In this document: positions 4,423-60,515 of the stretch, one piece after another | How the letters are laid out: the number at the start of each line of letters is the position of its first letter | Numbering within the stretch: position 1 is the first letter of the stretch | Origin: Octopus sinensis | Taxonomy: Eukaryota | NCBI RefSeq assembly: GCF_006345805.1 | Contig: NC_043018.1 | Location: forward strand, 5,332,001 to 5,396,000 | Direction of reading: 5' to 3' | DNA: 64,000 bases | Notes under the pieces: generated by a model | What the model saw: the letters and a program-made list of their open reading frames with translations, nothing else | What the model was told of the DNA's origin: nothing | The model's database searches: none | Position numbers and translations under genes: made by a program

Positions 4423-4604
4423 GCGATCCACATATGTCACTGCTGAGGATATCATCAATTTTAAATTGATCTGATTTCAAATCTTAGTGTTTGAATGCTT
4501 TATATATATATGTGTGTGGTGTGTGTATGTGTGTGTGTGTGTGTGTATGCATATATATACATATGTATGCATGCATGTATGTATGTCTATATATATATAT
4601 ATAT

Positions 4605-5015
4605 ATTGTTGTATTTAGGAATGGTCATTTTGCCAGTTTAGCCAATAAAAACACACGCACTATATATTTGGTGTTACTTTGCTGCAGCGTTATTTATTTT
4701 TTACACTAATCTTAATCTTATTTCGGTTAGAGTTCTTTCGTCACACTCCTGCGACCGCATCGGTGGTCCTTTGCTTTCTTCTTTCTTATTTGTGTGTCTC
4801 TCCTTACTAACGGTCAGCCATTTTGTATTTTGTATTTCTATTTTATGTGTCTTTATTTGCGCATGCGTATAACTTTATGTGTGTTCATGTTTAGTTAGTG
4901 TATGTGGGGGGGGGGAAGTGCCTCTTTCTCCTGTTTATATACGTTCGGGTAATTTGTTTTTGTTTGTGTTTTTATTGGCTAAACTTGCAAAATGACCATT
5001 CCTAAATACAACAAT
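4605..5015 (-). mobile_element. PLE 3'-end fragment with an inverted ~50-bp copy of the terminus (fold-back)
   Basis: 4605-~4950 is the reverse complement of ~23085-23424; 4966-5015 is an inverted copy of 4605-4655. Confidence 0.85.
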
Positions 5016-5069
5016 ATATGTTTCAACACACGATTTCACATCAAAAATCTTGCAAAACAAATATATATA

Positions 5070-5115
<46 letters not shown>

Positions 5116-5522
5116 ATATATATATATAATATTAGAAAAAAACACATTTTATCAATTCAAAATGAACAATTAAATTACACCATCTAGAAAATTACATATA
5201 ATAGGAATATTAAAATTAAAATAACAATAAAATGTCAACGATAAGGTAAATTGCAAAAAAATAATAAATTGTTATTTTAATTTTGATATTTCTATTATAT
5301 GTAATTTTCTAAATGGTGTAATTTAATTGTTCACTTTGAATTGATGAAAGGTGTCTTTTCTCTAATTTTACATATATATATATATATTGGCCTGCTCGCT
5401 TAGCCAGCGGGGTGGCGTCATTCAAAGGCTAAAACAATGCGAACGCATTGTGACCAGCGATGTGTAGCAACATCTGATGGTCTGGTCGGTCACGTGATCA
5501 CGTGATATATATATTTATTATA

Positions 5523-5562
<40 letters not shown>

Positions 5563-6643
5563 TGTGTGAAATTTGATTTAGTATTTCTAAATTGAATTTT
5601 GTTTTTCCTTGTAATTTGGATTTTATTCCCTCAAATGATAATTATACATATATATATATATATAAGCAAAACATTCAATCACTGAGATTTGAAATCAGAT
5701 GTCATTACTGTTAATATCATCTGTAGATAAATTTTAAAATTAATGATGTCACCAGCAGTGACGTAGGTGGATCGCAGGCGCAATAGCATTAAATAGCTAT
5801 GAATTATAAATTTGTACGAAGCTTTAGGATGCTTGACAAGCATCCACCTGCTAGAAATAAGTGCTAAAGTCTTAAATTTATCCACCGTACCGCACCAAGA
5901 TAACAAAGAAAAAAAGTATGCGAGGAAAAAAGAAAGGATTAAAGCATTTAACAGCACAAATGAAAATATTATGCAATTAAAGATATCCACATACCAGGTT
6001 TCGGCTTTTGGGTATTTAAGTCCTGAGCCTCGTCAGTGTGGCATTTTAGCATTATCTAAGTACAAAGTAAATGATGTCTAAATAAAATAAGACAGGATGG
6101 TTACGGCTGGGATGTCTTTGATCATAGCGCTACTGGAACTAAATGTAACAAAGATGTCTGTACGTGGTTAGTGAACCTACTTAAAATTTTCCTCACATCG
6201 TAAATTATTGTCTTTAAACAGGCCACAGGAGACAAAGGAACAGAAAACTATCGTTGTATCGGGAGATTAACACAGCTATTTTTGGATAGAAACTCCCTCG
6301 CAATGTACTTCAAATACAAAAACAAAGCAAGGGAAGCAACTCCGATAAGATCAGCTGAATGAAAATTTAGGATAACAGAACCACTGAAGGTTATATCTTG
6401 GGCTTGCACGTTAAGAAAAAATAAACTGGATGATCGAGTCCGGAATGTGGTCGAGTAAAGCCCTTCTCCATCATTGACAACGCTCGACTGGACTATTGGA
6501 ACCAAATGTGTAAATACATGTGCGTTCTTTGGTTTGCTCTTTAACCATAGCTCTAATATAGTTTGTATTGAATTCTCACTGTTTCTGTCTGTTTCTTCCT
6601 CTCTTCCTCTCTCTCTCTCCAAATATGTATATATACATATGTA

Positions 6644-6723
<80 letters not shown>

Positions 6724-6940
6724 CAATATAGGGAGGCAAAAAATTTGTAGAATTTTTTTGCCACCAGCGGCCTAGTGGGAAAAAATTAAATAGTCATAGA
6801 CCATTTTTAGTTCAACATCACAATCAAGGAACCGCCATAATAGGCCATTCACCCACTAGAAATAACAGCCAAAAGCTTCAACCGCAAAATAACATCAATT
6901 CCGTAAAACCAGGAGAAAATTAAAAAACATTTACCCTGTA

Positions 6941-7045
6941 ATTTCTTATACGATGCACCGTTTCATCTACTGTTTATGGTAAACTAACCTGATTAAATTA
7001 ATCAAGCCAATCTACCATAGGCCCTTAGATTCATCAGTAAGAAAT
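6941..7045 (-). ncRNA. Type I hammerhead ribozyme (intact), predicted cleavage between 6949 and 6948
   Basis: Reverse complement of the 7759-7863 motif: plus strand reads atttctta-ta-cgatgcaccg-tttc-atcta...tagat-tcatcag-taagaaat. Confidence 0.88.
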
Positions 7046-7279
7046 AGCCAAGTCGGAACAGATATTTTTCACGAGGCATTCCCGTCCCTGCCTCGGCAAT
7101 ATCTGACCTAAAATTTTCAAATCATCGCACTCGCGCCAAATTTATCGGCAGCAAATAAATATAAGCCGCCGATTCCATTACGGAATTAACCAGAAAATTC
7201 ATAATTAATCAATATAGGGTGGCAAAAAATTTTGTAGAATTTTTTTGCCACCAGTGGGAAAAAATTAAATAGTCATAGA

Positions 7280-7378
7280 CTGATGAATCTAAGGGCCTAT
7301 GGTAGATTGGCTTGATTTAATTTAATCAGGTTAGTTTACCATTAAACAGTAGATGAAACGGTGCATCGTATAAGAAAT
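7280..7378 (+). ncRNA. Hammerhead ribozyme copy lacking the 5' strand of stem I (cut by the fold-back junction)
   Basis: CTGATGA starts at 7280 directly after non-matching TCATAGA; stem II, GAAA, stem III and GUA are intact. Confidence 0.75.
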
Positions 7379-7758
7379 TACAGGGTAAATGTTTTTTAAT
7401 TTTCTCCTGGTTTACGGAATTGATGTTATTTTGCGGTTGAAGCTTTTGGCTGTTATTTCTAGTGGGTGAATGGCCTATTATGGCCGTTCCTTGATTGTTG
7501 TTGAACTTAAAAAATGGTCTATGACTATTTAATTTTTTCCCACTAGGCGCTGGTGGCAAAAAAATTCTACAAAATTTTTTGCCACCCTATATTGATTAAT
7601 TATGAATTTTCTGGTTAATTCCGTAATGGAATCGGCGGCTTATATTATTTGCTGCCGATAAATTTGGCGCGAGTGCGATGATTTGAAAATTTTAGGTCAG
7701 ATATTGCCGAGGCCAGGGACGGGAATGCCTCGTGAAAAATATCTGTTCCGACTTGGCT

Positions 7759-7863
7759 ATTTCTTACTGATGAATCTAAGGGCTATGGTAGATTGCCTTG
7801 ATTTAATTTAATCAGGTTAGTTTACCATTAACAGTAGATGAAACGGTGCATCGTATAAGAAAT
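7759..7863 (+). ncRNA. Type I hammerhead ribozyme (intact), predicted cleavage after GUA at 7855
   Basis: Stem I ATTTCTTA/TAAGAAAT; core CTGATGA (7767-7773); stem II ATCTA/TAGAT with an extended hairpin; GAAA; stem III CGG-TGCA-TCG; then TA. All invariant core nucleotides are present. Confidence 0.9.
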
Positions 7864-8239
7864 TACAGGGTAAATTTTTTATTTTCTCCTGGTTTACGGA
7901 ATTAATGTTATTTTGCGGTTGAAGCTTTTGGCTGTTATTTCTAGTGGGTGAATGGCCTATTATGGCCGTTCCTTGATTGTGATGTTGAACTAAAAATGAT
8001 CTATGACTATTTAATTTTTTCCCACTAGGCCGCTGGTGGCAAAAAAATTCTACAAAATTTTTTGCCACCCTATATTGATTAATTATGAATTTTCTGGTTA
8101 TTCCGTAATGGAATCGGCGGCTTATATTTATTGCTGCCGATAAATTTGGCGCGAGTGCGATGATTTGAAAATTTTAGGTCAGATATTGCCGAGGCAGGGA
8201 CGGGAATGCCTCGTGAAAAATATCTGTTCCGACTTGGCT

Positions 8240-8344
8240 TTTCTTACTGATGAATATAAGGGCCTATGGTAGATTGGCTTGATTAATTTAATCAGGTTAG
8301 TTTACCATTAAACAGTAGATGAAACGGTGCATCGTATAAGAAAT
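8240..8344 (+). ncRNA. Type I hammerhead ribozyme with one stem II mismatch (ATATA/TAGAT)
   Basis: TTTCTTA-CTGATGA-ATATA...TAGAT-GAAA-CGGTGCATCG-TA-TAAGAAA. Confidence 0.8.
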
Positions 8345-8465
8345 TACAGGGTAAATGTTTTTTAATTTTCTCCTGGTTTACGGAATTGATGTTATTTTGC
8401 GGTTGAAGCTTTTGGCTGTTATTTCTAGTGGGTGAATGGCCTATTATGGCCGTTCCTTGATTGTG

Positions 8466-8516
<51 letters not shown>

Positions 8517-8542
8517 TGTATGTATGTATGTATGTATGTATA

Positions 8543-8781
8543 TAGGGTCTCCGTAAAAGTTAATATACAGTTATTTGTAACAAAGAAATATCCTGGTTAA
8601 TCTAAAAAGATTTTCAGAAAATATATGTAATACATCAGAAATTGTCGCAACAATATAGACAATCAATTTCATTTCCTACAGTTTTGATCAATTTTCAAAT
8701 TTTAAGCCATTAGTTTTTAGTAATGCCTATTTCATAGAGTTGTTTTCAGCCTAAATGTATAGTAACTTTACAGACACCATG
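8543..8781. mobile_element. Tc1/mariner-type MITE
   Basis: Imperfect ~28-bp TIRs (AGGGTCTCCGTAAAAGTTAATATACA / TGTATAGTAACTTTACAGACACCATG) in TA context. Confidence 0.45.
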
Positions 8782-19445: not shown

Positions 19446-20622
19446 CCTTTGGTAGTAATTACGAAGTATGGACTCGTACAAAGTTTGAATTGTTTCCAAA
19501 GGAATTTTTGTCCATTCTTCAGCTAAAACAGTCTCCAGTTCTTGCAGCGATGATGGTGGAGTGTGTCGAATCCTTACATATTTTTTCTAAAATGCACTAT
19601 AAATGTTCAACAATATTGAGATCTGGGAACTGTGGTGGCCAGAAAAGATGTTCAACTTCATTAGAATGTTCCTCGTGCTATTCAGTAACAACTTTAACTG
19701 TATGAATTGATGCCTTTCAGACATAATAAGAAAAACGTAATTAAAATTCATTAAAATGACAGATCTATCGGACTGAAAGATTGCGTTTCCCTCCGGAAAC
19801 AGTTCTGAAACCATAGGATGGAACTGATCAGATAAAATGCTTAAATAATCTTGACTATTAATTCTGCCATGAAAGGAAACCATTGGGCCGGCGGATATTC
19901 AAGACATAGCTCCGCAGATCATCACAGATCCCCCTCCATATTTAACATATTTAACACGTATACTCACCCGGTGGTCAGAAATAAGAATAACATTCTTCCA
20001 CTGCTCTAGGGACCAATTCTCTAGGTTTTTACTCAACTCTAAAAGCTTTGCAACGTTTGCTTTTGAAAGTTGTGGTTTTCTGATTGCAGCCCTCCCGTGA
20101 AATCCGGGTTTGTGCAGCTCCCGGCGAACAATTTTTGTGGAAACTGGATTCTCGAGGTGGTCATTGATCTCTGCAATGATTTGGGGGATTGTACTTTTGT
20201 GATCCTTTGTAACAATTCGCGTAAGATTCCGACGGTCCCTGTCTGAAAGTTTTGATTTTCTTCCGGAGTCTTGTTTCGACGAGAAGGCTTCTTCCTTCTT
20301 TCTCAAAGACTGTCATTATTTTTGAGACAATAATTCTTGATACACCAAACAGTTCGGCTGTTTTTGTTAGTTTTGTTAGAGCCTGCTTTACGAGCACCAG
20401 CAATTTGACCTCTTTGAAAGTCCGATAGATCTGTCATTTTAATGAATTTTAGTTACCTTTTCCTGATGATATCTGAAAACATCAATTTTAGCAAAATATA
20501 TTAAGCAACACTAATAATAAATAAAAAAAAAATAAAAATAAACAAGGTTTTGACGGCTTTATAGATATTTCAAAATTATGATGCTATGATGCTAGGTGTT
20601 TCCATTATTTTATCCAACCCAT
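19446..20622 (-). mobile_element. Degenerate Tc1-like transposon
   Basis: TKTAELFGVSR HTH, SGRKSKLSDRDRR, VRRELHKPGFHGRAAIRKP, GGSVMICGAMS, GRINSQDYLSIL; frameshifted; 5' terminus near 20620. Confidence 0.85.
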
Positions 20623-21501: not shown

Positions 21502-21750
21502 TGTATACGTATACATATATACATATATAGATATATATATATATACGTATAATATATATGTATATATGTATTATATATATATTATATACACACACATATA
21601 TATATATATCTTATATATATATATATCTATATATATATGTATACTTATTCATATATGTGTATGTATATATATATATACATATATATATGAATATGTATAT
21701 GTGTATTATATATGTATTTACATATATATATATGTGTGTGTGTGTGTGTA

Positions 21751-23424
21751 TGATATCAACATAGTGGTAAAGGCACTCCCACAAGAGAGTACTGTTGATA
21801 TAGTAATAGAAACTAATACTATGGAGAGCATCCAGCAAATAGCTAACTCCATCCACCAGAGTATTAAGGTCACAATAGACTACCCCACTAAACACCCCAA
21901 CCATTGACTACCAGTACTAGACATTGAACTCTGGCTTGAAATTGTGAATAATAAAACCCAAATCCTTCATTCATACTATGCCAAACCTATGGCCTCAAAA
22001 TACTTGATCCACCGGAACTCAGCCATTGCGGACAATGCCAAATTCAATATTTTGATGGCAGACCTCGTCAGAATAATGAGAAATGTGTCACGCATGTGCG
22101 ATCCTACAGAGTTAAAGAGACACATACAATAAATATTTCATTCACCGCATACAGTTCTCAGGTTACAGCCATAAAGAAAGGATCAGAGTATACAAAGGAG
22201 CCATGAAGAAATTTGATAATATATTATGTAATGATAGGAATGAGATTTGCCCACTCTATAGGAACAAGTCATGGAACACTATAGAAAGGACAAAAAAGAA
22301 AATAGAGAAGGCCAACTCTTGGTATGATAGCCATAAATACCAGGGTGCCATGTTCGTTGACACCACCCCTGGAGGTGAATTGGCGTACCGTTTTAGAAGG
22401 ACCCTAGACAAACTTAAGCTAAGGATTAAGGTTGTTGAAAAGCCAGGCAACCCTATCAAATCTATAATTGATAGAACCTATCCTTTTAGTAGAACCCCCT
22501 GTACGGATAAGTACTGTACTGTATGTAGATTTAGCCTACAAACAAACTGTAAAGCCAGAAATGTAGTCTATAGTATAAGATGTATAGAGGGACGATGCAG
22601 TAACAAGACAACGACATACGTAGGGGAAACGGCAAGAAGCATAGGAGAGCGGGTAAATGACCATTGGAGAGAACTCAAGGAAGGTAAAAGCTCATCGATT
22701 CTGTACCAACACGCCGAACAGGAACACGGGGGATCAATCAACAACATAGAAATTAAAATATTGTCCACACATAGAACAGATGCAACAATCAGACAAATTA
22801 CAGAAGCTACACACATAATAGAAAATAAACCTAGCCTGAATAGGAAACTAGAATGGAACACTAGCACACACCACAACATATGACGGTAGAGGATTCCAAA
22901 AACATAATAAATACACAGATAAATAAACAAATAGAAATAAATAACTATATAAGTTGTTTTTTTATTTGTTATTCTTATTACTAGAATTGTTGTTATACAT
23001 ACAATCATAGGTAATGATAATAATAAGTGGATATAAACACATGAACAAAATAAGAATAAACAAAAACAACAACAAAAACAAATTACATGAACGTATATAA
23101 TCAGAAGATACAAATATTACAGGCATCCCCCCCCCACACTAAATAAACATAGACGCACATAGAGATATAAGCATGCGCAAATGAAGACATACAATAGAAA
23201 TACAAAATGGCTGACAGTTAGTAAGGAGAGACACACAAATAAGAAAGAAGAAAACAAAGGACCACTGATGCGGTCACAGGAGTGTGATGAAAGCACTCTG
23301 GCCGAAATAAGATTAAGATTAATGTAAAAAATAAACAACACTGAAGCAAAATAACACCAAATATATAGTGCGTGTGTTTTTATTGGCTAAACTGGCAAAA
23401 ATGACCATTCCGAAATATAACAAT
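21751..23424 (+). mobile_element. 5'-truncated Penelope-like retroelement: RT C-terminal half, Cys-rich linker, C-terminal GIY-YIG endonuclease and 3' non-coding region; inactivated by stops and a frameshift
   Basis: Translation runs from (Y)DINIV at the RT YxDD region through LPVLDI, YAKPMASKY, SGY and TPGGEL to PC..KYC.VC, NVVYSIRC and YVGETARSIGERVNDH, ending IRQITEATHI...KPSLNRKLEW* (ORF 22203-22883). Flanked by (TG)n/(AT)n. Confidence 0.9.
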
Positions 23425-23546
23425 ATATATATATATATACATATGTATATACAATGTTGTGGAGTGGAATGAAAGCATTTGAAGTGGTCAAGATAACGTA
23501 AGACGTAAAAGAGATCTAAGGGAGAATGTAACGATCGAGAAAGTAA

Positions 23547-23899: not shown

Positions 23900-23948
<49 letters not shown>

Positions 23949-24090
23949 ATATATATTATATATATATCAACAATCAAGGAACGGCCATAATAGGCCATTC
24001 ACTCACTAGAAATAACAGCCAAAGCTTCAACCGCAAATAAAAATTAATTCCGTAAACCAGGAGAAAATTTAAAAAAACATTTACCCTGTA

Positions 24091-24196
24091 ATTTCTTATA
24101 CGATGCACCGTTTCATCTGCTGTTTAATGGTAAACTAACCAGATTAAATTAAATCAAGCCAATCTTCCATAGGCCCTCAGATTCTTCAGTAAGAAT
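24091..24196 (-). ncRNA. Type I hammerhead ribozyme (CUGAAGA variant)
   Basis: Reverse complement has CTGAAGA, stem II ATCTG/CAGAT, GAAA, CGGTGCATCG, TA and stem I. Confidence 0.85.
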
Positions 24197-24579
24197 AGCC
24201 CAAGTCGGAACAGATATTTTCACGAAGCATTCCGACCCTGCCAAGGTAATATCTGACCTAAAATTTTCAAATCGTCGCACTCGCGCCAAATTTATCGGCA
24301 GCAAATAATATAAGCCGTCGATTCCATTACGGAATTAACCAGAAAATTCATAATTAATCAATATAGGGTGGCAAAAAAAAATTTTGTAGAATTTTTTTGC
24401 CACCAGCGGCTAGTGGGAAAAAATTAAATAGTCATAGACCATTTTTAAGTTCAACATCAACAATCAAGGAACGGCCATAATAGGCCATTCACCCACTAGA
24501 AATAACAGCCAAAGCTTCAACCGCCAATATAAAATTAATTCCGTAAACCAGGAGAAAATTAAAAAACATTTACCCTGTA

Positions 24580-24684
24580 ATTCTTATACGATGCACCGTT
24601 TCATCTGCTGTTAATGGTAAACTAACCTGATTAAATTAAATCAAGCCAATCTTCCATAGGCCCTCAGATTCTTCAGTAAGAAAT
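24580..24684 (-). ncRNA. Type I hammerhead ribozyme (CUGAAGA variant)
   Basis: Same motif one unit (489 bp) further along. Confidence 0.85.
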
Positions 24685-24758
24685 AGCCCAAGTCGGAACA
24701 GATATTTCACGAGGCATTTCCGACCCTGCCAAGGTAATATCTGGTTCCGACTTGGGCT

Positions 24759-24867
24759 ATTTCTTACTGAAGAATCTGAGGGCCTATGGAAGATTGGCTT
24801 GATTTAATTAATCATTAGTTTAGTTTACCATTAAACAGCAGATGAAACGGTGCATCGTATAAGAAAT
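24759..24867 (+). ncRNA. Type I hammerhead ribozyme (CUGAAGA variant), predicted cleavage after 24859
   Basis: ATTTCTTA-CTGAAGA-ATCTG...CAGAT-GAAA-CGGTGCATCG-TA-TAAGAAAT. Confidence 0.9.
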
Positions 24868-25250
24868 TACAGGGTAAATGTTTTTTTAATTTTCTCCTGG
24901 TTTACGGAATTAATTTTTATTTGCGGTTGAAGCTTTGGCTGTTATTTCTAGTGGGTGAATGGCCTATTATGGCCGTTCCTTGATTGTTGATGTTGAACTT
25001 AAAAATGGTCTATGACTATTTAATTTTTTCCCACTAGGCCGCTGTGGCAAAAAAATTCTACAAAATTTTTTTTGCCACCCTATATTGATTAATTATGAAT
25101 TTTCTGGTTAATTCCGTAATGGAATCGACGGCTTATATTATTTGCTGCCGATAAATTTGGCGCGAGTGCGACGATTTGAAAATTTTAGGTCAGATATTAC
25201 CTTGGCAGGGTCGGAAATGCCTCGTGAAAATATCTGTTCCGACTTGGGCT

Positions 25251-25357
25251 ATTTCTTACTGAAGAATCTGAGGGCCTATGGAAGATTGGCTTGATTTAAT
25301 TTAATCAGGTTAGTTTACCATTAAACAGCAGATGAAACGGTGCATCGTATAAGAAAT
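25251..25357 (+). ncRNA. Type I hammerhead ribozyme (CUGAAGA variant), predicted cleavage after 25349
   Basis: Same core and stems as 24759-24867. Confidence 0.9.
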
Positions 25358-25542
25358 TACAGGGTAATGTTTTTAAATTTTTTAATTATTTTTAATTTTA
25401 AATTAATTTTTATTTGCGGTTGAAGCTTTGGCTGTTATTTCTAGTGGGTGAATGGCCTATTATGGCCGTTCCTACACCACTTGTTTTCTACACCACTTGT
25501 CTTCGTCTTTTGTTTTCTTGTGAATTCTTCCTATATATATAC

Positions 25543-25597
<55 letters not shown>

Positions 25598-25606
25598 TAT
25601 ACGTAT

Positions 25607-29366: not shown

Positions 29367-32248
29367 GACAGGCTTCTTTCAGTTTCCGTCGACAAAATCC
29401 GCTCACGGAGGCTATAGTAGAAGATACTTGCCCAAAAGTTAACGCTGTCGGATTGAACCCATAAGCATGTGGTTGAGAGGCAAGTTTCTTACCTCACAGC
29501 CACGCCTTGAAATTTTCGCATATTCCCCGAAGCTAAATTGTCAATATTTTAATTCTTTGGATAGAAAAGAATGCCTTATTACACTCGTTCCGCCTATTTG
29601 GACCCTGAATTCTAATCCTATGGAGGTTAGCTGTGTCATTGTTTCGCTGGCAATATAAAAATTGTCAGCCCTACTGTTGATTTTGTTTCCTCATATAACT
29701 GTCCAATTACATTCAAACATCTTTAAAATATAGATGATTATTAGTTAACGTAATAATACATCATATATCGAAATGTATAAACTAAAGGGAATATCAAAAT
29801 AGTGACGTGGCTTGTTAAAATCAGAGTAACAGTAATTTCAGAGGAAGAATAAGTCAAAAACAACGATCCCAGGTTTCAAAATGTACTTACTTTATCGACC
29901 CCAAAAGGATGAAAGGTGAAAGCTAACTGGTAACAACCAGCACTAGCTTAGGCTAACCTCACTGTGATAATCCCGTTTTACATATTTTGAGCAGCTAAAT
30001 GAATGGATAGAAGACAACACCTAAATAGTTTGTTTTATATCTTTTAGTCAAGTGGAAAGGCAGTGTCCATAACATGTTGCCTCTCAGACTAGCGGTGGGA
30101 GAGGGAAGGTTTCATCAAACCGGAAACCTGGCCCTCATGCTTGCGACGGAGTGAATTGTTTCGCTAAAGATATCTAAAGTGCCGGGGAATGGTATTAAAG
30201 CAGATGATGGATGAAGTATATTACTACCCTGATTAGAAGGCAGTGAGCTGGCAGAATCGCTACCGTGCAGGGAAAATACTTAGCAGCATTTCGTCCGTCT
30301 TTAAAATCCTCCGAGGCTGATTTAAAATAATGGGGTCGATGTAATTGACTTAATCCCTCCCACGAAATTGCTGGCCTTGTGCGAAAATTTGAAACCATTA
30401 TTATTCTGGTAAGAAGGCGGTGAGCTGGGAGAATTGTTTGCGCGCTGGAAAACTGCTTAGCGGTGATTCGTCTGTCTTTACGTTCTTCGTTCGAATTCCG
30501 TTGCGATCAACTTTGGTCATTCTAGTGTCGATCAAATTAGTAACCCTCGAACACTAGGATCCATGTAATCGAATAAACCCCGCCCCTAATATTTCGGGTC
30601 TTGTGTCCTATTATTACCCAAAGAAGACAGCAATATGGCTAATCGTTAGGACACGGAAAGAAACGCTTAGCGACAATTTATAAATCGAGTCCGAAGCAGT
30701 GACTCACGAAGTTAACTTCGGCCGGGTTGAAACTCAGGGCAGAAGGAGATTAAACGATCCCTCTAACGCATTCTCTTTTATTCAGCTTCTTGATATGCTG
30801 AGTTCAAATTCCGCCGAAGTCAACTTCGCCATTCTTCTTTCGGGGGTCGGTCAAATAAGTAACGTTTGAGCATCGGGGTTAGTGTAATCGACTAGTGCCC
30901 TCTCCGAAACTTTTGATGCAACGTACCTATTGTAGAAAGAGTTATTAACCCTAGTAGGGCATGGCGATATTTGAAAAGATAAAAGGGAAGCAACTGCCAC
31001 AAAGCATCCGATCTTCTGCTCTTACGGTTCCATTAACTCACCGTCTTGGACTGGTAATTTGGTACTTTTCTTATCAGCCACCAAAAAGATAGAAAATAAA
31101 GATGATTTTGGCGTCATTTGAACTCAGAGCGCAGAGTGTCAAAACGACTATCAAGCGGCATTTTGTCCAACGCTGTATGCATCCCCACCACCCTTCCGTT
31201 GACACAACCGATTGCCCTTAAAAATGGTGATACATTATATAATCTTGGTGGTGCTACGTAGGTCGGTCTTGGGTGTTATTAATCTGCTCCACGTATGCGA
31301 ATACCTGGGCAAGATTTTCCAGTAAAACTGGTAATTGCTTTTTGCCTGCAAGTCTCTCGACCTCAAGCTACCGTTTTATATCCAAGAAACTTTGTTCGAT
31401 ACAGATTGCCAACTAGTTTTCTTGCAGACGTTGCTCACGAAAGGCCAAGATCCAAAAGAGATATAAAAGTCCCCTTACGTGCTATATTGGCACTTTATTA
31501 CGGACCCCCTAAAGTATCACCGTCAAGGTTGACCTCAATAGGATTTGAAATCAGAGCATACATACTGCGTGCTATTCTATTCAACATAGTAACAATTCTG
31601 CTAATTCAACCATAGTCTCCTACATTACGCATCTTGGAATAGATTGGATAAAGTTTTTCTAGATACGTAAAGCATGAACTCGACAGGACGATGATGAGTG
31701 GATCATATTTAATGAATTGTCTGCTCCGATGGGACTGAGCGAGGCATCTAACCAACAACAACCACAACATCGACATCAGCAACAACGATGACGACGACAG
31801 GTGCATCTCATTTTTGCCAAGTGAGAGGACAGGAGAAGCGTGGAAAAATATCTTACGCAAGGACACATCATGCCGCCGGTATTTAAACTGACGATAGACT
31901 AATGTAACCATATAAAAAGTTTATGGCCTTATATTGCGCCTAGCCATTTATATCAATTTTTATTATATACATTAGCATTTCGTTAAACCAGTCATAAATT
32001 TATATCGAAAGTATATATAGTGACAGATCGATTTAGCCAAACTATCCGAGCGATGGAATCGGCATTGCTGAGGAGTCTACAACTGATCGGTGAAAGTTGT
32101 TTAGCACAGTGCTCCTAGCATGGGGTGGTTATCTTCTCTTTCAGTGTATATACACTGTGCGCTTCATACAGAATTACGGGTTTTAGCTCGTAATTCTTGC
32201 AATATAGCTACTATTTTCAGCACCCTCAGCCACAATCAGTGACGGTTT

Positions 32249-32928: not shown

Positions 32929-34749
32929 CACTGTGCAACAAATTTCAGGTTCAAAAAAAGTTCAAGTTAAATAAGACTTGTTTCTGGGTCAAAAAATTGT
33001 CCTGATTCTGATTCTGACCTTTGTTTCTCGAGATTAGGCACCGTTTTCCTGTACCATGAACCATATGTTTTATAATATACTGCATAATATCGTGTATTGA
33101 ACACAACATTGCAAATACTGAAAGTTACAAAAAACAAAACAAAAATTTAGTTGGTATAACAAAACATATATTGGTTATGAATTAAAAACACACCTGTCAG
33201 TTTAAACAACTTTTGTCCCTCTAAACCTCTTGTGCGGATTGTGATCGTCTTTTTTTATACCCCAGCAGTAGTCTGCCAACATGCCAGGGTTCCATTTTCC
33301 TTTGAATCGTCGCTCCAGATTCTGATGGAATCTTTCCATCATTCACATCACCAGGATTTTCCGCAAAAAAAATCCAAATGCGAGTGAAGCACATGAACTT
33401 TTAGAGACATATTACATCCCATATCATGGTAATAACTCAGCAGATCATTCAAAACTTGCACATAGTCTTCTGAACGATGGTTGCCCAGGAAGTTATAGCA
33501 AATTTTCTTGAATGACTCAAAGGAAAGCTTCTCTTTTCTCTTGAGATGTGTGATGAAGGTTTCATCAAGTACAATTTTTCGAATTTGGTGCCCTATGAAG
33601 AAACCTTCTTTAATTTTAGCTTGACCCAGGGAAAGGAACTTTTCTGCAAGATATGCAAATGCGGAGGATTCCTTGTCCAAAGCTTTCACAAATTGCTTAA
33701 ACAAACCAAGTTTAATATGCAAAGGTGGTAACAATTCTAACACTTTTCACAAGTGATTTGTGCATGATATTGTGTTTTCCTTGCTCAATTTCATCTCAGA
33801 TCGGCCAATCCTTGCGTACATAATGTTCAGCTCTTTCTCTGGAATTCCATAAGCACATGAAGCAGCAAAATTTAGTATAGCCATGCTGAAGGCCAGTAAG
33901 CATGGCCACAACCTTAAAATCTGCACAAATATGCCTGGTATGGTCATCATACTGTGTGCATGTTAGAATTGCTTTCAGATTTTCATATGATTCTTTCATG
34001 GTTGTGCTATAAGCTATGAGAACAGAAGACAGAGTGTTACCATTGTGTAGCAGAACAGCTCTGATGCTGTCCTTGGATGCATCTATGAAAAGTCGCCAGT
34101 TGGTTTTATCATATGGTATTTCCAGTTACTCAAAAGGTTCAGTGATGTTATTACAAAAGCATAAGTCATCCTTCATGGTGAATAATGCAAGCAGATCCCC
34201 TGTACGTTTTCTGTACATTGTTATCTTCACTCCTTTCTCAAGAAGATTACGTTCTTGAAGTCTTGATGCCAGAAACTTACCTTTCTCTTTGGTTAAATAG
34301 AGAACCCTGCACAAGTCATTTGGAGCCTCTTGAGAAAATGGTATTGGTTTATTCTCGCTTTCTGGATCATTGGGTTCCACACATACACCACTGAAATGTT
34401 CATCAGCACTGCTAGAACTCTGCATTTCTTGTTCTGGAGATTTGGGCACAGGTAATTTTTGTACTGTCTTGCACTCGTTGTTGAAAACAAGTAAGATCTG
34501 ACAGATAAAAAAGATCATTAAACACAAGCTTTGAATCACATTGTAGGTGTTACTAAGATTGGTTGGAACCCATTTTACAATGCGGTAGAGATTTTTATTT
34601 AATAATAATGACATAAAGGGTATGTAGTGACAATTCTGTAGAAACCATGCCTAATTCAACAAAAAGAAGGCCAGAAATGGATTTCCCATGTCCTCTTGCA
34701 TATAAAAATGGCCACAGATCTCTTGTACTTTTTTGAGTGTTGCACAGTG
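32929..34749 (-). mobile_element. Chapaev3-like (CMC superfamily) DNA transposon with both termini and a decayed transposase
   Basis: 12-bp TIRs CACTGTGCAACA (32929) / TGTTGCACAGTG (34749) with TTA on both sides. Peptides MKESYENLK...ICADFKVV...GYTKFCCFMCLWNSR, LLPPLHIKLGLFKQFVKAL and SLKVHVLHSHLDFF. Family name is from recall of the motifs and the TWA TSD. Confidence 0.8.
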
Positions 34750-47047: not shown

Positions 47048-47315
47048 AACACATACCACACGAAAGTAAACAAAAGACGAAGGCAGGTGGAGTACAAACA
47101 AACAATCGTATTTGTATGGCGCTCAGGAAAAAAAATAAAACAAGTCTTTTACGTTTCGAGCCTACGCTCTTCAACAGAAAGATACACAGAAAAGAAACAC
47201 GGAGAGAAACGAACGGGACAGTTTATACGAACAAGTTCAAGGTTGAAAGTTCAAGGTTAAAAATGTATAGACGTCGTGGTATATTTTAAGGATTTCACAT
47301 CAATAACAAAGTCAC

Positions 47316-58073: not shown

Positions 58074-58623
58074 TATTTTCGCTCCTATCTTCTCTCTTCG
58101 CATACAGGGATGGGGTGGGTTCGATGGGATAGATAGGGAAGCCACACCATCCCTTGCGTTTCCCACTCTCACCTCCCCCACCTCCCAACACCATAGCACA
58201 CAACACCACATAACATCACATCACACCACCACACACACACTAGCTCTGACCACTTCCCAGCCCCACATCCACACACCTACACATACACATACACACATGC
58301 CAAGGTCACCAGCCCTCTTCCGCACGCACATACATACTCTCTTATACACACACACGTGCAACTTCGTTTTGGGTTCATTTCTACTTTATTATCTCCCCTT
58401 CTTCCAAGCACTCCTGTATGACCCATCTGTCCCGCCATCGCCGCGATAGATCGCTAGCCACTACACATTCTTTATTTCTCTGTCGCCTGTGTTCTTCTTG
58501 TTCTGTTTGTGGAAGAGCGTAGGCTCGAAACGTAAAGACTTTCCCTTCCCGAGCGTTTAAACTGATCATCTGTTTCTTGTCTACACCACCAGTCTTCATC
58601 TTTTGTTTTTTATTGCGATTCTC

Positions 58624-58674
<51 letters not shown>

Positions 58675-59514: not shown

Positions 59515-59880
59515 TCACAAGGTTCTTTATTAAAATCCCCCACAATTGTTCGACTCATCCTGCACCAGTAATAACTGCATGGTATGTAAGATTAACCCTG
59601 GCATTAATTGTAGAACTAAAAACGCAGTTTACAGCATAAGGTGCATAGGTGTTTGTAGAGACAAGAACATGATATACATAGGTGAGACATTTAGGAACAT
59701 TGCAGAGAGACTAAATGTACGTAACGACAAAAAGCAGCCCTCCATACTCTATCAACATGCCAAAGACCAACATAAAGGCTCACTAGGTCAACTTGACATC
59801 CGCATTTTATCCAGGCACCCGAAGGATCCAACTCTCAGACAAATACATGAGTACGTCCTCATAAATGAAGGATCGCTTTC
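59515..59880 (+). mobile_element. Penelope-like element GIY-YIG endonuclease fragment, bounded by an assembly gap and a mariner fragment
   Basis: NCRTKNAVYSIRC...IYIGETFRNIAERL...ILYQHAKDQH...LRQIHE aligns by eye with the 22203-22883 protein. Confidence 0.85.
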
Positions 59881-59881
59881 T

Positions 59882-60515
59882 CTAAACATTTCGGTAGATA
59901 ATCCATTTCTCATCACCTGTCGCAATTTGCTTTAAAAAAGGCGCGTTTTCATTCCGTTTATAAAGCGAATCACAGATGGAAATGCGATCCAAAAGGTTCT
60001 TCTCACTCAACTCATGTGGTACCCAAACATCGTAGCGATTTGTGTACCCAAGCTTTACCAGGTGTTCATGAACGACGGATTTTGATAGGTTGAGGCTTTC
60101 TGCCAATTCTCGGGTTGTGCAATGTGGGTTATTCTCAATTAATGACTTGATTTGGTCATCATCTGTAGTGGATGGTCTGCCTGATCGCTCTTTATCAATA
60201 AGGCTACAATCTCGAGCTCGGAATCTTGCGAACCACTTCCGTACAGTTCTTTCGGATAAAGAAACATCACCGTAAACTGCGCATATTACTTTGGTTACTT
60301 GTGAGGCATTTTTCCTTTTACGGAAAAAGAAAAGCATCAAGTGCCGAAAATGAACTTTCTTATCTTCCATTTTAAAGGGTTACAGAATTAACACAGGTTA
60401 TAGGGACATAAACCTTCTTCCACGAAAAGATAGCTTAAACTGTGCTCTAAATGGAAGTGTAGTCAAATCCTATTTTATGGACACTACCATGTTCTAAAAT
60501 AGTTCGTACCATTTG
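59882..60515 (-). mobile_element. mariner transposase, N-terminal half only
   Basis: ORF 59882-60370: HFRHLMLFFF, WFARFR, RSGRP, TTRELAESL, WVPHEL, TGDEKWIIY, then breaks off after the first catalytic D. Confidence 0.9.

What the first reader, a model, noticed from the sequence alone, without database searches (positions are those of the whole stretch)
6722..8467. A ~490-bp non-coding tandem unit carrying a complete type I hammerhead ribozyme: candidate retrozyme / circular-RNA element
Seen: each unit reads ATTTCTTA-CTGATGA-ATCTA...TAGAT-GAAA-CGG-TGCA-TCG-TA-TAAGAAAT. That is an 8-bp stem I, the full hammerhead core, stems II and III and a GUA cleavage triplet. There are four copies here (6941-7045 minus; 7280, 7759, 8240 plus), spaced ~485 bp apart, and four more at 23966-25473. 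The unit has no protein ORF but has further strong hairpins (e.g. GGTGGCAAAAAATT/AATTTTTTTGCCACC at 7218-7252). Established: tandem type I hammerhead repeats in animals (newt satellite 2, schistosome SM-alpha, cricket pDo500, non-LTR retrozymes) are transcribed, self-cleave to monomers and can circularise. Inference: read-through transcripts would be cut into ~490-nt monomers starting UAAGAAAUUACAGG. I do not know of a description of this family in cephalopods, but I cannot search.
Basis: partly seen in the sequence, partly recalled or inferred. Interest (0 to 1): 0.93.

Follow-up and report, generated by a model that had tools for sequence, protein, structure and literature searches.

The report
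Hammerhead-ribozyme tandem repeat (animal retrozyme)
Two stretches of this window are copies of a ~485-bp non-coding repeat that carries a self-cutting hammerhead RNA motif; it fits the already described "non-LTR retrozyme" class of animal mobile elements, and the way the copies are laid out suggests they were pasted in by the enzymes of a Penelope-like retrotransposon.

Summary
A 481-490-bp non-coding unit occurs at 6724-8466 and 23968-25473. All 8 copies keep the hammerhead (HHR) core (CUGANGA...GAAA, A15.1-U16.1, GUA cut site). Six have all three helices. One (7280) lacks the 5' strand of helix I and one (8247) has a helix II mismatch. Shuffled windows give 0 comparable motifs.

It meets every testable feature of a non-LTR retrozyme (Cervera & de la Pena 2020): type I HHR in short tandem repeats, GC 36-37%, no ORF, strongly self-paired RNA. 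That makes it a new member of a known kind, not a new class.

Three refinements:
- Helix III is a weak hairpin (-0.2 kcal/mol), but its sequence ACGGUGCAUCGU is self-complementary. Dimeric transcripts fold into a double hammerhead in the unconstrained MFE, so cleavage probably needs two adjacent units.
- Neither locus is a simple tandem array. Each is two 5'-truncated arrays joined head-to-head, with 3' ends outward inside (TA)n microsatellites. Three of four 3' ends fall at unit positions 121-130.
- This is the published insertion signature of Penelope-like elements (PLEs). A resident PLE family shows it in the same window (4590-5019).

Not shown: self-cleavage, circular RNA, transcription, the autonomous partner, and the source organism. 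Rfam does not detect the motif.

The parts
6724..7280 (-). Locus 1, minus-orientation array. Unit positions 147->485 then 1->~245 (1.2 units). Its 3' end faces left and abuts (AT)n.
   Evidence: blastn map of the 485-nt unit; alignment; end sequence ...CCCTATATTGAT|AAATATAT
7279..8466 (+). Locus 1, plus-orientation array. Unit positions 396->485, two full units (7371-7855, 7856-8336), then 1->128 (2.45 units). Its 3' end faces right and abuts (TA)n/(TATG)n. The 5'-5' junction with the minus array at 7279/7280 has 2-nt microhomology.
6941..7045 (-). Complete type I hammerhead (helix I 8 bp, II 5 bp plus a long extension, III 4 bp). Predicted cut after 6949 on the minus strand.
7280..7378 (+). 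Hammerhead copy truncated at the inversion junction. The core and helices II/III are present; the 5' strand of helix I is absent.
7759..7863 (+). Complete type I hammerhead. Core CUGAUGA at 7767-7773; GUA at 7853-7855; predicted cut 7855|7856.
8240..8344 (+). Hammerhead copy with defects: A.G mismatch in helix II bp 3 and a 1-nt deletion in the helix I 5' strand.
23968..24743 (-). Locus 2, minus-orientation array. Unit positions 328->485, a full unit (24099-24586), then 1->130. Its 3' end faces left and abuts (TA)n.
24736..25473 (+). Locus 2, plus-orientation array. Unit positions 368->485, a full unit (24860-25349), then 1->~121. The 5'-5' junction at 24736-24743 lies in the unit's own inverted repeat CAGATATT/AATATCTG (8-nt overlap). 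The arms 24634-24699 and 24744-24809 are 100% complementary.
24091..24197 (-). Hammerhead, core CUGAAGA, helix I 6 bp.
24579..24684 (-). Hammerhead, core CUGAAGA, helix I 6 bp.
24759..24867 (+). Complete hammerhead, core CUGAAGA. Predicted cut 24859|24860.
25251..25357 (+). Complete hammerhead, core CUGAAGA. Predicted cut 25349|25350. Together with 24759-24867 it brackets a releasable 490-nt monomer.
7553..7587 (+). 12-bp palindromic hairpin GGUGGCAAAAAA...UUUUUUGCCACC, present in every unit (also 6733-6765, 7218-7252, 8036-8070 and in locus 2). The second array-end site (unit ~245) lies about 10 nt 3' of it.
6623..6723 (.). (AT)n microsatellite, left flank of locus 1 (presumed target).
8467..8541 (.). 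(TA)n/(TATG)n microsatellite, right flank of locus 1.
23901..23967 (.). (TA)n microsatellite, left flank of locus 2.
25474..25601 (.). Right flank of locus 2: 58 bp unrelated to the unit (25474-25531), then (TA)n (25532-25601). The 58 bp is the end of another repeat family.

Best explanation
The two loci are independent insertions of one family of non-autonomous, non-coding retroelements of the metazoan non-LTR retrozyme kind. The unit is about 485 nt and carries one type I hammerhead.

Proposed life cycle:
1. A tandem array is transcribed into multimeric RNA. This step is inferred.
2. The self-complementary helix III segments (ACGGUGCAUCGU) of neighbouring units pair to form a double hammerhead. 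Each core then cuts at GUA|U and releases ~485-nt monomers with 5'-OH and 2',3'-cyclic phosphate ends. The fold is shown in silico; the chemistry is inferred from the hammerhead family.
3. A tRNA ligase of the RtcB type circularises the monomers. A lone helix III hairpin is weak, so the circles would resist re-cleavage. This step is inferred from PMC7229834.
4. Multimeric or circular RNA is copied into the genome by the reverse transcriptase/GIY-YIG endonuclease of a Penelope-like element. That enzyme cuts AT-rich or (TA)n DNA, extends both DNA strands, and starts reverse transcription at an internal RNA site rather than at the RNA 3' end.

Step 4 would produce what is seen here: two 5'-truncated tandem arrays joined head-to-head by microhomology, with 3' ends outward at a preferred unit position, inside a (TA)n microsatellite. 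The architecture is shown; the enzyme is inferred.
For: HHR motif:
- All core positions are invariant in 8/8 copies, and the only core difference between the loci is at N7.
- Six copies have all three helices, against 0 strict hits in 100 shuffles.
- The HHR-compatible fold lies within ~1.4-3.4 kcal/mol of the MFE (1.4-1.8 for six copies).
- The single compensatory change among 138 predicted pairs falls in helix II (A-U <-> G-C).

Retrozyme features:
- Unit 481-490 bp, GC 36-37%, 57-64% paired as a circle, folding z-scores -5.4 and -4.7.
- No conserved ORF.

Double hammerhead:
- The helix III hairpin is worth -0.2 kcal/mol; the homoduplex is worth -17.5.
- Two HHR domains cofold to -75.1, against 2 x -30.8.
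- In the unconstrained MFE of three ~600-nt dimeric transcripts, the helix III segments ~490 nt apart pair with each other, and helix I forms across the two units.
- The same dimeric mode is documented for newt and ASBVd HHRs (PMC6155905) and for axolotl retrozymes (PMC7229834).

Insertion architecture:
- Both loci are head-to-head arrays.
- The junctions differ between loci (unit 147/396 versus 328/368), so the events are independent.
- Cross-arm copies within a locus are as similar as same-arm copies (0-1.6% substitutions), against 4-7% between loci. Each locus therefore came from one template.
- Array 3' ends fall at unit positions 128, 130, ~121 and ~245. Three read TTGAT|(AT)n, and each lies just 3' of a strong hairpin.
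- Both loci sit in (TA)n, although only ~12% of the window lies within 60 bp of a (TA)>=8 run.

Literature match:
- PLE insertions are partial tandems with an adjacent inverted 5'-truncated copy and a (TA)n bias (PMC8557442).
- A purified PLE protein cleaves and extends both strands, prefers AT-rich DNA, and starts RT internally ~85-92 nt 3' of its HHR cut site (PMC11167929).
- Retrozymes have been proposed as PLE-dependent (PMC7229834; bioRxiv 10.64898/2026.07.22.740005).

In-window control: a resident canonical PLE family (EN ORF 22203-22883 with a CX4CxxC linker and GIY-YIG/CCHH motifs; plus my own reading of the translation against the motifs named in PMC8557442) has a 5'-truncated insertion at 4590-5019. 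It has the same head-to-head, 3'-ends-outward, TA-flanked layout.
Against: - No experimental or transcript evidence is available here for transcription, cleavage or circles.
- Rfam Hammerhead models do not hit the motif. They also barely score a canonical-looking minimal HHR at 5992-6036 (E~9), so this negative is weak.
- The 10.1-11.1 pair is A-U rather than the usual G-C, and helix II carries a ~60-nt extension. Tertiary helix I/II contacts cannot be assessed.
- Covariation support is one event.
- Copies show decay (7280, 8247, 1-nt deletions in helix I). They behave as neutrally evolving insertions, and locus 1 probably cannot release a monomer.
- The unit is slightly longer than the published 150-450 bp range.
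- No autonomous PLE with a clearly homologous terminal region was found. The similarity to the PLE-A 3' end is weak (p~0.03-0.07).
- Locus 2 is nearly symmetrical, so its two outer ends are not independent under a fold-back or palindrome model.
- The 58-bp extra sequence at locus 2 is part of another repeat, not a demonstrated PLE 'tail'.
- No further copies turned up in JGI metagenome contigs, IMG/VR, protein space, or ~102 kb of possibly related ENA contigs.
Confidence: 0.6

Rival explanations
1. Dead relic. The family once was a retrozyme or PLE-derived repeat, but these two loci (and perhaps the whole family) are now untranscribed, decaying insertions. No ribozyme activity or circular RNA exists today.
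For: - Two of 8 HHR copies are clearly defective and two more have a shortened helix I.
- Within-locus divergence reaches 3.5%, with many homopolymer indels.
- The core is not visibly more conserved than the rest of the unit.
- No copies were found in any searchable collection.
Against: - Locus 2 retains intact HHR pairs bracketing full units on both strands.
- All 15 core positions are intact in 8/8 copies.
- Between-locus divergence is only 4-7%, so the family was active fairly recently.
- Retrozymes studied so far are constitutively transcribed (PMC7229834).
- This rival concerns present activity, not the nature of the element.
Confidence: 0.22
2. Purely DNA-level satellite. The repeats were amplified by unequal crossing-over or replication slippage. 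The inverted arrangement arose by palindrome formation or template switching at fragile (TA)n tracts and internal hairpins. There was no RNA intermediate, and the hammerhead is a passenger.
For: - The locus 2 junction lies exactly in an internal inverted repeat, and the flanking 66 nt are 100% complementary, as fold-back replication would give.
- Locus 2 is nearly symmetrical.
- Locus 1 shows an A-B-A higher-order pattern: 7317-7498 and 8283-8464 are identical.
- (TA)n tracts are known fragile, hairpin-forming sequences (general knowledge).
Against: - There are two separate loci with different junctions. The array-end position (unit 128/130, TTGAT|AT) is shared between locus 1 and locus 2, which random DNA breakage does not predict.
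- Locus 1 is strongly asymmetric (584 versus 1186 bp), so it is not a simple palindrome.
- An unrelated resident PLE fragment shows the same architecture in the same window.
- The layout matches a biochemically demonstrated PLE activity (PMC11167929).
Confidence: 0.1
3. Not an independent element. The repeats are severely 5'-truncated insertions of an autonomous Penelope-like element, and the ~485-bp unit is simply that element's pseudo-LTR/3' region.
For: - PLEs carry HHRs in their pLTRs and insert as 5'-truncated partial tandems with inverted copies (PMC8557442).
- In Xenopus, retrozymes are sister to PLE pLTRs (10.64898/2026.07.22.740005).
Against: - The arrays contain more than one complete unit repeated with a 481-490-bp period. 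A tandem of a full PLE would repeat with a period of several kb.
- No RT/EN coding sequence adjoins either locus.
- The two PLE remnants in the window share no significant similarity with the unit.
- PLE HHRs are usually minimal, with almost no helix III (PMC6155905). This one has full helices and a long helix II.
Confidence: 0.07
4. Chance resemblance to a hammerhead inside an ordinary AT-rich repeat.
For: No Rfam hit.
Against: - 0 strict motifs in 100 shuffled windows, against 6 observed.
- All core positions are invariant, with the only change at N7.
- There is a compensatory change in helix II.
- The context is the one in which type I HHRs are known to occur.
Confidence: 0.01

Closest known systems
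Metazoan non-LTR retrozymes (Cervera & de la Pena 2020, PMC7229834; e.g. mussel, coral and axolotl families)
   Same: - Type I hammerhead in every unit of a short, low-GC, non-coding tandem repeat.
- Predicted highly self-paired unit-length RNA.
- Co-occurrence with PLEs in the same genome.
   Different: - The unit (481-490 bp) is slightly above the reported 150-450 bp.
- Helix II carries a ~60-nt extension, and the 10.1-11.1 pair is A-U.
- The arrays here are short (1.2-2.5 units) and paired head-to-head. I did not find this arrangement described for retrozymes in the papers read.
- No expression data.
Newt satellite 2 / axolotl HHR_Amex retrozymes and ASBVd: double-hammerhead self-cleavage (PMC6155905, PMC7229834)
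   Same: - Weak helix III capped by a palindromic tetraloop.
- Two tandem motifs can form an extended helix III. Here it is 12 bp and forms in the MFE of dimeric transcripts.
   Different: - Helix III here has 4 potential pairs, against 1-2 in the amphibian motifs.
- There is no sequence similarity.
- The dimer requirement is predicted, not measured.
Penelope-like elements (Penelope/Poseidon/Neptune; PMC8557442, PMC11167929)
   Same: - Insertion architecture: partial tandems, an adjacent inverted 5'-truncated copy, and an AT-rich/(TA)n target.
- The defined 3' boundary is not at the HHR cut site but roughly 100 nt downstream of it.
- An HHR is present.
   Different: - No RT/EN ORF, so the element is non-autonomous.
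- The repeat period is the 485-nt unit, not a multi-kb element.
- The HHR is a full three-helix motif rather than the minimal PLE variant.
- No demonstrated 30-40-bp 'tail'.
Schistosoma SM-alpha and cricket pDo500 repeats
   Same: Type I hammerhead in dispersed or tandem non-coding repeats of invertebrates.
   Different: These rest on recalled knowledge and on mentions in PMC6155905. There is no sequence similarity, and I did not compare structures in detail.
L1 twin priming (5'-inverted L1 insertions)
   Same: The geometry is the same: two cDNAs primed from the two target DNA ends and joined 5'-to-5' by microhomology.
   Different: A different enzyme family. L1 starts at the poly(A) tail. This comparison is an analogy from general knowledge, used only to explain the geometry.

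Membership tests
Hammerhead ribozyme, type I | Conserved core C3-U4-G5-A6-N7-G8-A9 and G12-A13-A14 | tested here: met
   Invariant in 8/8 copies. The only variation is U/A at N7.
Hammerhead ribozyme, type I | A15.1-U16.1 pair followed by H17 (not G) at the cleavage site | tested here: met
   GAAA-C...G-U-A|U, i.e. a GUA triplet, in 8/8 copies.
Hammerhead ribozyme, type I | Three helices around the core, with helix I open-ended | tested here: met
   Helix I 6-8 bp, II 5 bp plus extension, III 4 bp in 6/8 copies. One copy lacks the helix I 5' strand and one has a helix II mismatch.
Hammerhead ribozyme, type I | G10.1-C11.1 closing pair of helix II (usual, not absolute) | tested here: not met
   A-U in all copies. 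The effect on activity is unknown here.
Hammerhead ribozyme, type I | Match to the curated Rfam hammerhead covariance models | tested here: not met
   No hit at gathering score or at E<=10. The long helix II insertion probably explains this, and a canonical-looking minimal HHR at 5992-6036 also scores only E~9.
Hammerhead ribozyme, type I | Helix I / helix II tertiary contacts and Mg2+-dependent self-cleavage | not testable with these tools
   Internal loops lie 8 bp (helix I) and 5 bp (helix II) from the core, but this says nothing certain about contacts.
Metazoan non-LTR retrozyme | Type I HHR within short tandem repeats (150-450 bp), from dimers upward | tested here: met
   Tandem spacing is 481-493 bp and arrays hold 1.2-2.45 units. 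The unit is slightly above the published range.
Metazoan non-LTR retrozyme | Low GC (<45-50%); no LTR; non-coding | tested here: met
   GC 36-37%. No conserved ORF. No terminal direct repeats other than the unit itself.
Metazoan non-LTR retrozyme | Highly self-paired unit RNA | tested here: met
   Folding z-scores -5.4 and -4.7, with 0/100 shuffles folding as well. 57-64% of bases are paired in the circular fold.
Metazoan non-LTR retrozyme | Expressed as unit-length linear and circular RNA | not testable with these tools
   No transcriptome of the source organism is reachable.
PLE-mobilised insertion (PLE signature) | Partial tandem plus an adjacent inverted 5'-truncated copy (head-to-head, 3' ends outward) | tested here: met
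   Seen at both loci. The same layout occurs for the resident PLE fragment at 4590-5019.
PLE-mobilised insertion (PLE signature) | AT-rich / (TA)n target bias | tested here: met
   Three of four array ends abut (TA)n directly; the fourth lies 58 bp from it. About 12% of the window is within 60 bp of a (TA)>=8 run.
PLE-mobilised insertion (PLE signature) | Defined internal reverse-transcription start (clustered 3' ends not at the RNA 3' end or HHR cut) | tested here: inconclusive
   Ends fall at unit 128, 130, ~121 and ~245. Only 3 are independent if locus 2 is a fold-back, so n is too small.
PLE-mobilised insertion (PLE signature) | Optional 30-40-bp 'tail' at one end | tested here: inconclusive
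   The 58 extra bp at 25474-25531 are homologous to the ends of another repeat (58574-58625; rc 47064-47101).
PLE-mobilised insertion (PLE signature) | Sequence relatedness to the pLTR/3' end of a resident autonomous PLE | tested here: inconclusive
   There is a 35-nt, 66%-identical block next to the 3' junction in both, but 55-138 of 2000 shuffles score as well. No blastn hit.
Autonomous Penelope-like element | ORF with RT and GIY-YIG endonuclease | tested here: not met
   The unit has no ORF, so it is not filed as a PLE.

The most novel reading that the evidence does not exclude
Retrozyme RNA (multimeric or circular) is a direct template for Penelope-like-element target-primed reverse transcription on both DNA strands. 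Initiation occurs at a specific internal entry site: a strong hairpin followed by ~10 nt ending in UUGAU, about 125 nt 3' of the hammerhead cut. If so, the head-to-head, (TA)n-embedded mini-arrays seen here would be the general genomic footprint of retrozyme mobilisation in invertebrates. The dimer-only hammerhead would be what keeps the circular form intact.
Probability: 0.4. Interest if true: 0.55.

Novelty: new member of a known kind. Interest (0 to 1): 0.4.

Why it matters
Non-LTR retrozymes are a recently recognised source of abundant small circular RNAs in animals, and how they move is still open. PLEs have been proposed as the drivers, from co-occurrence (2020) and from sequence similarity to PLE terminal repeats in frogs (2026 preprint). 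The authors of that preprint state that invertebrates were not examined.

This window adds a different kind of evidence, the insertion footprint. Two independent retrozyme insertions show the head-to-head, 3'-ends-outward, (TA)n-embedded layout. Purified PLE protein would be expected to produce this layout, and a bona fide PLE fragment shows it 2 kb away.

A genome-wide census of this family's array ends would be a cheap and direct test of the PLE-mobilisation hypothesis. It would also give a candidate RNA entry site for biochemical work.

As a ribozyme, the motif is an ordinary though slightly unusual hammerhead (long helix II, A-U at 10.1-11.1, self-complementary helix III).

Tried and rejected
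- **Rfam.** The whole window at gathering score gave nothing. Regions 6600-8600 and 5850-6200 at E<=10 gave no usable hammerhead hit. The negative is uninformative, because a canonical-looking minimal HHR also scores only E~9.
- **TRF.** It does not report the ~485-bp period, even with a maximum period of 2000. I used blastn and the repeat finder instead.
- **Exact 23-nt HHR pattern.** JGI metagenome contigs and IMG/VR gave 0 hits.
- **Protein-space route to more copies.** The 83-aa ORF of the unit found no homologues. An exact look-up of a 77-aa unit ORF and of the PLE ORF found nothing on record.
- **Sampling a possibly related genome.** A TE ORF at 33348-33743 has 80-90% identical copies on Mb-scale ENA contigs. 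I fetched five 20-kb loci (L004-L008), which hold 0 retrozyme and 0 PLE-A copies.
- **Organism.** SRR and ERZ accession searches in the literature gave nothing relevant. The cephalopod origin is unverified.
- **Link to the resident PLE.** Logan contigs of a 78%-identical PLE-A relative (L001-L003) contain no HHR and nothing similar to the unit. The PLE-A 3' UTR has an HHR-like stretch (23262-23312), but with C at position A9 in both copies, so I did not count it.
- **PDB.** The sequence search with the PLE EN ORF gave no hit.
- **PLE 'tail'.** I considered whether the 58-bp sequence at 25474-25531 is one and rejected this as unproven, because it belongs to another repeat family.
- **Strand asymmetry of folding energy.** I considered it as evidence for the RNA strand and rejected it. 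The z-scores are alike on both strands (-5.4 versus -5.2), and the difference in raw energy follows G+U composition.
Full report
**1. What is there**

The string GAAACGGTGCATCGTA, which is the 3' half of the proposed hammerhead, occurs eight times. Five are on the plus strand and three on the minus strand.

I took the 485 nt between two predicted cut sites (7371-7855) as the unit and mapped it with blastn. This places every copy in two loci and nowhere else in the window.
- Locus 1 is 6724-8466.
- Locus 2 is 23968-25473.

The gapless repeat finder confirms direct-repeat spacings of 482-493 bp. TRF does not report the period, even when allowed periods up to 2000.

No ORF is conserved. The longest are 77-83 aa with non-ATG starts on the minus strand of locus 1, and they are broken in locus 2.

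**2. Is the hammerhead real?**

An alignment of the eight motif copies shows:
- CUGANGA, GAAA, the A15.1-U16.1 pair and the GUA triplet are invariant.
- The single core difference between the loci (U versus A) is at N7, the one core position that tolerates any base.

I wrote a structural scan requiring the core, helix I >=4 bp, helix II >=3 bp, helix III >=2 bp and H17 not G. Results:
- It recovers six family copies with helices of 6-8/5/4 bp.
- One hundred dinucleotide-preserving shuffles of the window give a mean of 0.1 relaxed hits and no strict hit.
- The copy at 7280 lies on the inversion junction and has no 5' strand of helix I.
- The copy at 8240-8344 has an A.G mismatch in helix II and a 1-nt deletion in helix I.

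The hammerhead-compatible fold is within about 1.4-1.8 kcal/mol of the MFE for six copies, and 3.4 for the junction-truncated copy. The nearest-neighbour model gives no credit for the core's tertiary structure.

Covariation is minimal. One pair, helix II bp 5, is A-U in locus 1 and G-C in locus 2. It is the only compensatory change among 36 hammerhead pairs and among 138 pairs predicted for the whole unit. That is one evolutionary event.

Rfam gives no hammerhead hit at gathering score or at E<=10. The ~60-nt extension of helix II is the probable reason. A canonical-looking minimal hammerhead elsewhere in the window scores only E~9, so the negative carries little weight.

Two departures from the usual motif:
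- The 10.1-11.1 pair is A-U.
- Helix II continues, after a 5-bp stem and an internal loop, into a long irregular hairpin.

**3. How the ribozyme would work**

Helix III (ACGG-UGCA-UCGU) is essentially unstable as a hairpin, at -0.2 kcal/mol. Because the tetraloop is palindromic, the 12-nt segment is self-complementary, and two copies form a 12-bp duplex worth -17.5 kcal/mol.

Two hammerhead domains cofold into a textbook double hammerhead at -75.1 kcal/mol, against 2 x -30.8 for separate folds.

I also folded ~600-nt transcripts spanning two neighbouring hammerheads, with no constraints (locus 2 plus, locus 2 minus, locus 1 plus). In all three:
- The two helix III segments, ~490 nt apart, pair with each other.
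- The 5' strand of helix I of the first motif pairs with the 3' strand that follows the second motif's cut site. This is the geometry of a double hammerhead.

Dimeric cleavage of this kind is documented for newt satellite 2 and ASBVd (PMC6155905) and for axolotl retrozymes (PMC7229834).

I therefore expect multimeric transcripts to cut efficiently and single motifs poorly. This would also protect a unit-length circle from re-cleavage. PMC7229834 raises the question of how circles stay intact and leaves it open.

Only locus 2 keeps apparently competent motif pairs bracketing a full unit: 24759-24867 with 25251-25357 on the plus strand, and 24579-24684 with 24091-24197 on the minus strand.

**4. 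The unit as an RNA**

- GC content is 36-37%.
- As a circle, 57-64% of bases are paired.
- Folding energy is far below shuffled controls: z = -5.4 and -4.7, with 0/100 shuffles as stable.
- The complementary strand has a similar z-score of -5.2, so folding does not identify the transcribed strand. Only the plus polarity carries a ribozyme.

These are the published properties of metazoan non-LTR retrozymes: type I hammerhead, tandem repeats of 150-450 bp, low GC, no LTR/PBS/PPT, and highly self-paired circular RNAs (PMC7229834). The unit here is slightly longer than that range.

**5.

Neither locus is a simple tandem array.

| Locus | Minus array (unit positions) | Plus array (unit positions) |
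|---|---|---|
| 1 | 147->485, 1->~245 | 396->485, full, full, 1->128 |
| 2 | 328->485, full, 1->130 | 368->485, full, 1->~121 |

In both loci the two arrays meet 5'-to-5' in the middle and their 3' ends face outward.

*Junctions.* They differ between loci.
- Locus 1 has 2-nt microhomology at 7279/7280.
- Locus 2 has an 8-nt overlap inside the unit's own inverted repeat CAGATATT/AATATCTG, with 66 nt of perfectly complementary arms either side.

*Origin of each locus.*
- About fifteen fixed differences separate the loci (4-7% substitutions).
- Copies from opposite arms of one locus are as alike as copies from the same arm (0-1.6%).
- Each locus therefore derives from a single template, and the two loci are independent events.

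*Outer ends.*
- Three of the four read ...TTGAT joined to (AT)n. All four lie immediately 3' of a strong hairpin.
- Three of the four are within 10 nt of each other in unit coordinates (121-130).
- Both loci are embedded in (TA)n microsatellites. About 12% of the window lies within 60 bp of a (TA)>=8 run.

**6. What this architecture matches**

Craig et al. (PMC8557442) describe PLE insertions as follows:
- 5'-truncated partial tandems.
- Often an inverted 5'-truncated copy immediately adjacent.
- A strong bias for microsatellites, (TA)n in particular.
- Hammerheads in the pseudo-LTRs of canonical PLEs.

Frangieh et al. (PMC11167929) showed that a purified PLE protein:
- cleaves and extends both DNA strands;
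- prefers AT-rich sites;
- starts reverse transcription at internal RNA sites. The main one is 111-118 nt into the ORF, and the hammerhead cut is 26 nt into it, so the start is about 85-92 nt downstream of the cut;
- does not need hammerhead cleavage in vitro.

Two arrays primed from the two ends of a cut (TA)n target, both starting at a preferred internal site about 125 nt downstream of the hammerhead cut and joined in the middle by microhomology, give exactly the layout seen here. A repeat period equal to the unit implies that the template was a multimeric or circular unit RNA.

PLEs were proposed as retrozyme mobilisers in PMC7229834. A 2026 preprint (10.64898/2026.07.22.740005) supports this in vertebrates, from co-occurrence and from similarity of frog retrozymes to PLE pLTRs, and states that other animals were not examined. 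None of the papers I read describes head-to-head retrozyme arrays.

**7. An internal control**

The window contains a canonical PLE remnant, which I call PLE-A (about 21750-23439, plus strand).
- The ORF 22203-22883 has a CX4CxxC linker, GIY (VVYSIRC), C-x4-C ... H-x4-H and YIG (YVGET) motifs. These are read from the translation and compared with the motifs named in PMC8557442.
- It has a sub-threshold Pfam GIY-YIG hit.
- An RT-thumb-like stretch lies upstream (this reading rests on my knowledge of PLE RTs).
- It is flanked by TA-rich microsatellites on both sides.

A second insertion of the PLE-A 3' UTR lies at 4590-5019.
- It is again a head-to-head pair: rc of 23062-23439, followed by a plus copy of 23373-23428.
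- Both 3' termini (...AAATAYAACAATA) face outward. The left one abuts (TA)n directly; the right one lies about 40 bp from (AT)n.

The retrozyme loci therefore share their layout with a genuine PLE insertion 2 kb away.

A direct sequence link to PLE-A is not established.
- There is no blastn hit.
- A 35-nt, 66%-identical block sits next to the 3' junction in both elements, but it is matched by 3-7% of shuffles. I record it as a lead only.
- The 58 bp between the right end of locus 2 and its (TA)n tract belong to another repeat family. They are not a demonstrated PLE 'tail'.

**8. Caveats**

- Locus 2 is nearly symmetrical. Its junction lies in an internal hairpin, so fold-back priming or a DNA-level palindrome would also explain it. 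In that case its two outer ends are not independent observations. That leaves three independent ends, two of them coincident. Locus 1 is clearly asymmetric (584 versus 1186 bp).
- Copies differ by many homopolymer indels, which may partly be assembly error.
- Locus 1 shows an A-B-A pattern: 7317-7498 and 8283-8464 are identical while the middle unit differs. This could reflect a dimeric template or later unequal exchange.
- I could not obtain any further family member:
  - no exact-pattern hits in JGI metagenomes or IMG/VR;
  - no protein-space hits;
  - none in ~102 kb sampled from Mb-scale ENA contigs that carry 80-90% identical copies of another TE of this window.
- Transcription, cleavage, circularisation, copy number and the source organism remain untested.

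**9. Verdict**

The retrozyme reading is supported at the level of sequence and predicted structure.

The element is a new family of an already described kind, the non-LTR retrozyme with a type I hammerhead. It is not a new class.

The added value is twofold:
- A predicted double-hammerhead mode of cleavage.
- An insertion footprint that matches PLE-type target-primed reverse transcription on both strands, which makes the PLE-mobilisation hypothesis testable by a simple genome-wide census of array ends.

Interest is moderate, at 0.4.

Noticed in passing
window 21750-23439 (+), ORF 22203-22883: A 5'-truncated canonical Penelope-like element ('PLE-A'). [quoted passage not shown] It lies ~500 bp upstream of retrozyme locus 2. 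A 78%-identical relative occurs in Logan runs SRR11869384, SRR11869391 and SRR11869394.
   Followed up: partly
window 4590-5019: A second PLE-A 3'-UTR insertion arranged head-to-head (rc of 23062-23439, then a plus copy of 23373-23428). Both 3' termini face outward next to TA-rich microsatellites. I used it as an in-window control for the PLE insertion signature.
   Followed up: yes
window 59546-59935 (+) and 59882-60370 (-): A second PLE-type endonuclease ORF (CX4CxxC, GIY-YIG; Pfam E=4e-4) abuts a truncated Mos1/mariner transposase ORF (HTH_48) on the opposite strand.
   Followed up: no
window 5992-6036 (-): A compact hammerhead-like motif with a canonical G10.1-C11.1 pair, 5-bp helix I, 4-bp helix II and 2-bp helix III (GCCACA-CUGACGA-GGCU...AGCC-GAAA-CCUGGUA|UGUGG). 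It lies 690 bp left of locus 1, is unrelated in sequence to the retrozyme, and scores only E~9 in Rfam.
   Followed up: partly
window 63026-63074 (-) and 32068-32141 (+): Two further, weaker hammerhead-like motifs (helix III 2 bp). With 5992-6036 that makes 3 non-family hits, against 0.1 expected per shuffled window. Some are therefore probably relics of other PLE or retrozyme families.
   Followed up: no
window 23262-23312 and its copy at rc 4720-4770: A hammerhead-like stretch in the PLE-A 3' UTR (CUGAUGC-GGUC...GGCC-GAAA) has C in place of the essential A9 in both copies. It is either a degenerate hammerhead or not one.
   Followed up: partly
window 25474-25531; 58574-58625; rc 47064-47101: The 58 bp between the right end of locus 2 and its (TA)n tract are the terminal part of another dispersed repeat, which elsewhere also ends in (TA)n. 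Either the retrozyme inserted next to or into that repeat, or this is a chimeric reverse-transcription product.
   Followed up: partly
window 25366-25410: The last partial unit of locus 2 has its segment CTCCTGGTTTACGG... replaced by an AT-rich 17-bp tandem duplication. This makes it 8-12% divergent from all other copies.
   Followed up: no
window 7317-7498 vs 8283-8464: Two segments two units apart are 100% identical over 182 nt, while the unit between them differs (A-B-A pattern). This suggests a dimeric template or later unequal exchange.
   Followed up: no
window 23340-23425 vs unit positions ~85-121 (e.g. 24944-24980): A 35-nt, ~66%-identical block (TTTTTATTGGCTAAACTGGCAAAAATGACCATTCC versus TTTCTAGTGGGTGAATGGCCTATTATGGCCGTTCC) sits about 12 nt upstream of the 3' junction in both PLE-A and the retrozyme. 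Between 3% and 7% of shuffles score as well.
   Followed up: partly
window 5109-5387: An AT-rich palindromic element (arms ~140 bp, 83% complementary) lies between two (AT)n tracts. It looks MITE- or foldback-like.
   Followed up: no
window 33348-33743 (-), 19899-20306 (-): TE-derived ORFs. The first has 80-90% identical copies on Mb-scale contigs of ENA assemblies ERZ25067570, ERZ25067590, ERZ25878469 and ERZ25067582, presumably host DNA of the same or a related species. The second is a Tc1-type transposase HTH fragment.
   Followed up: partly
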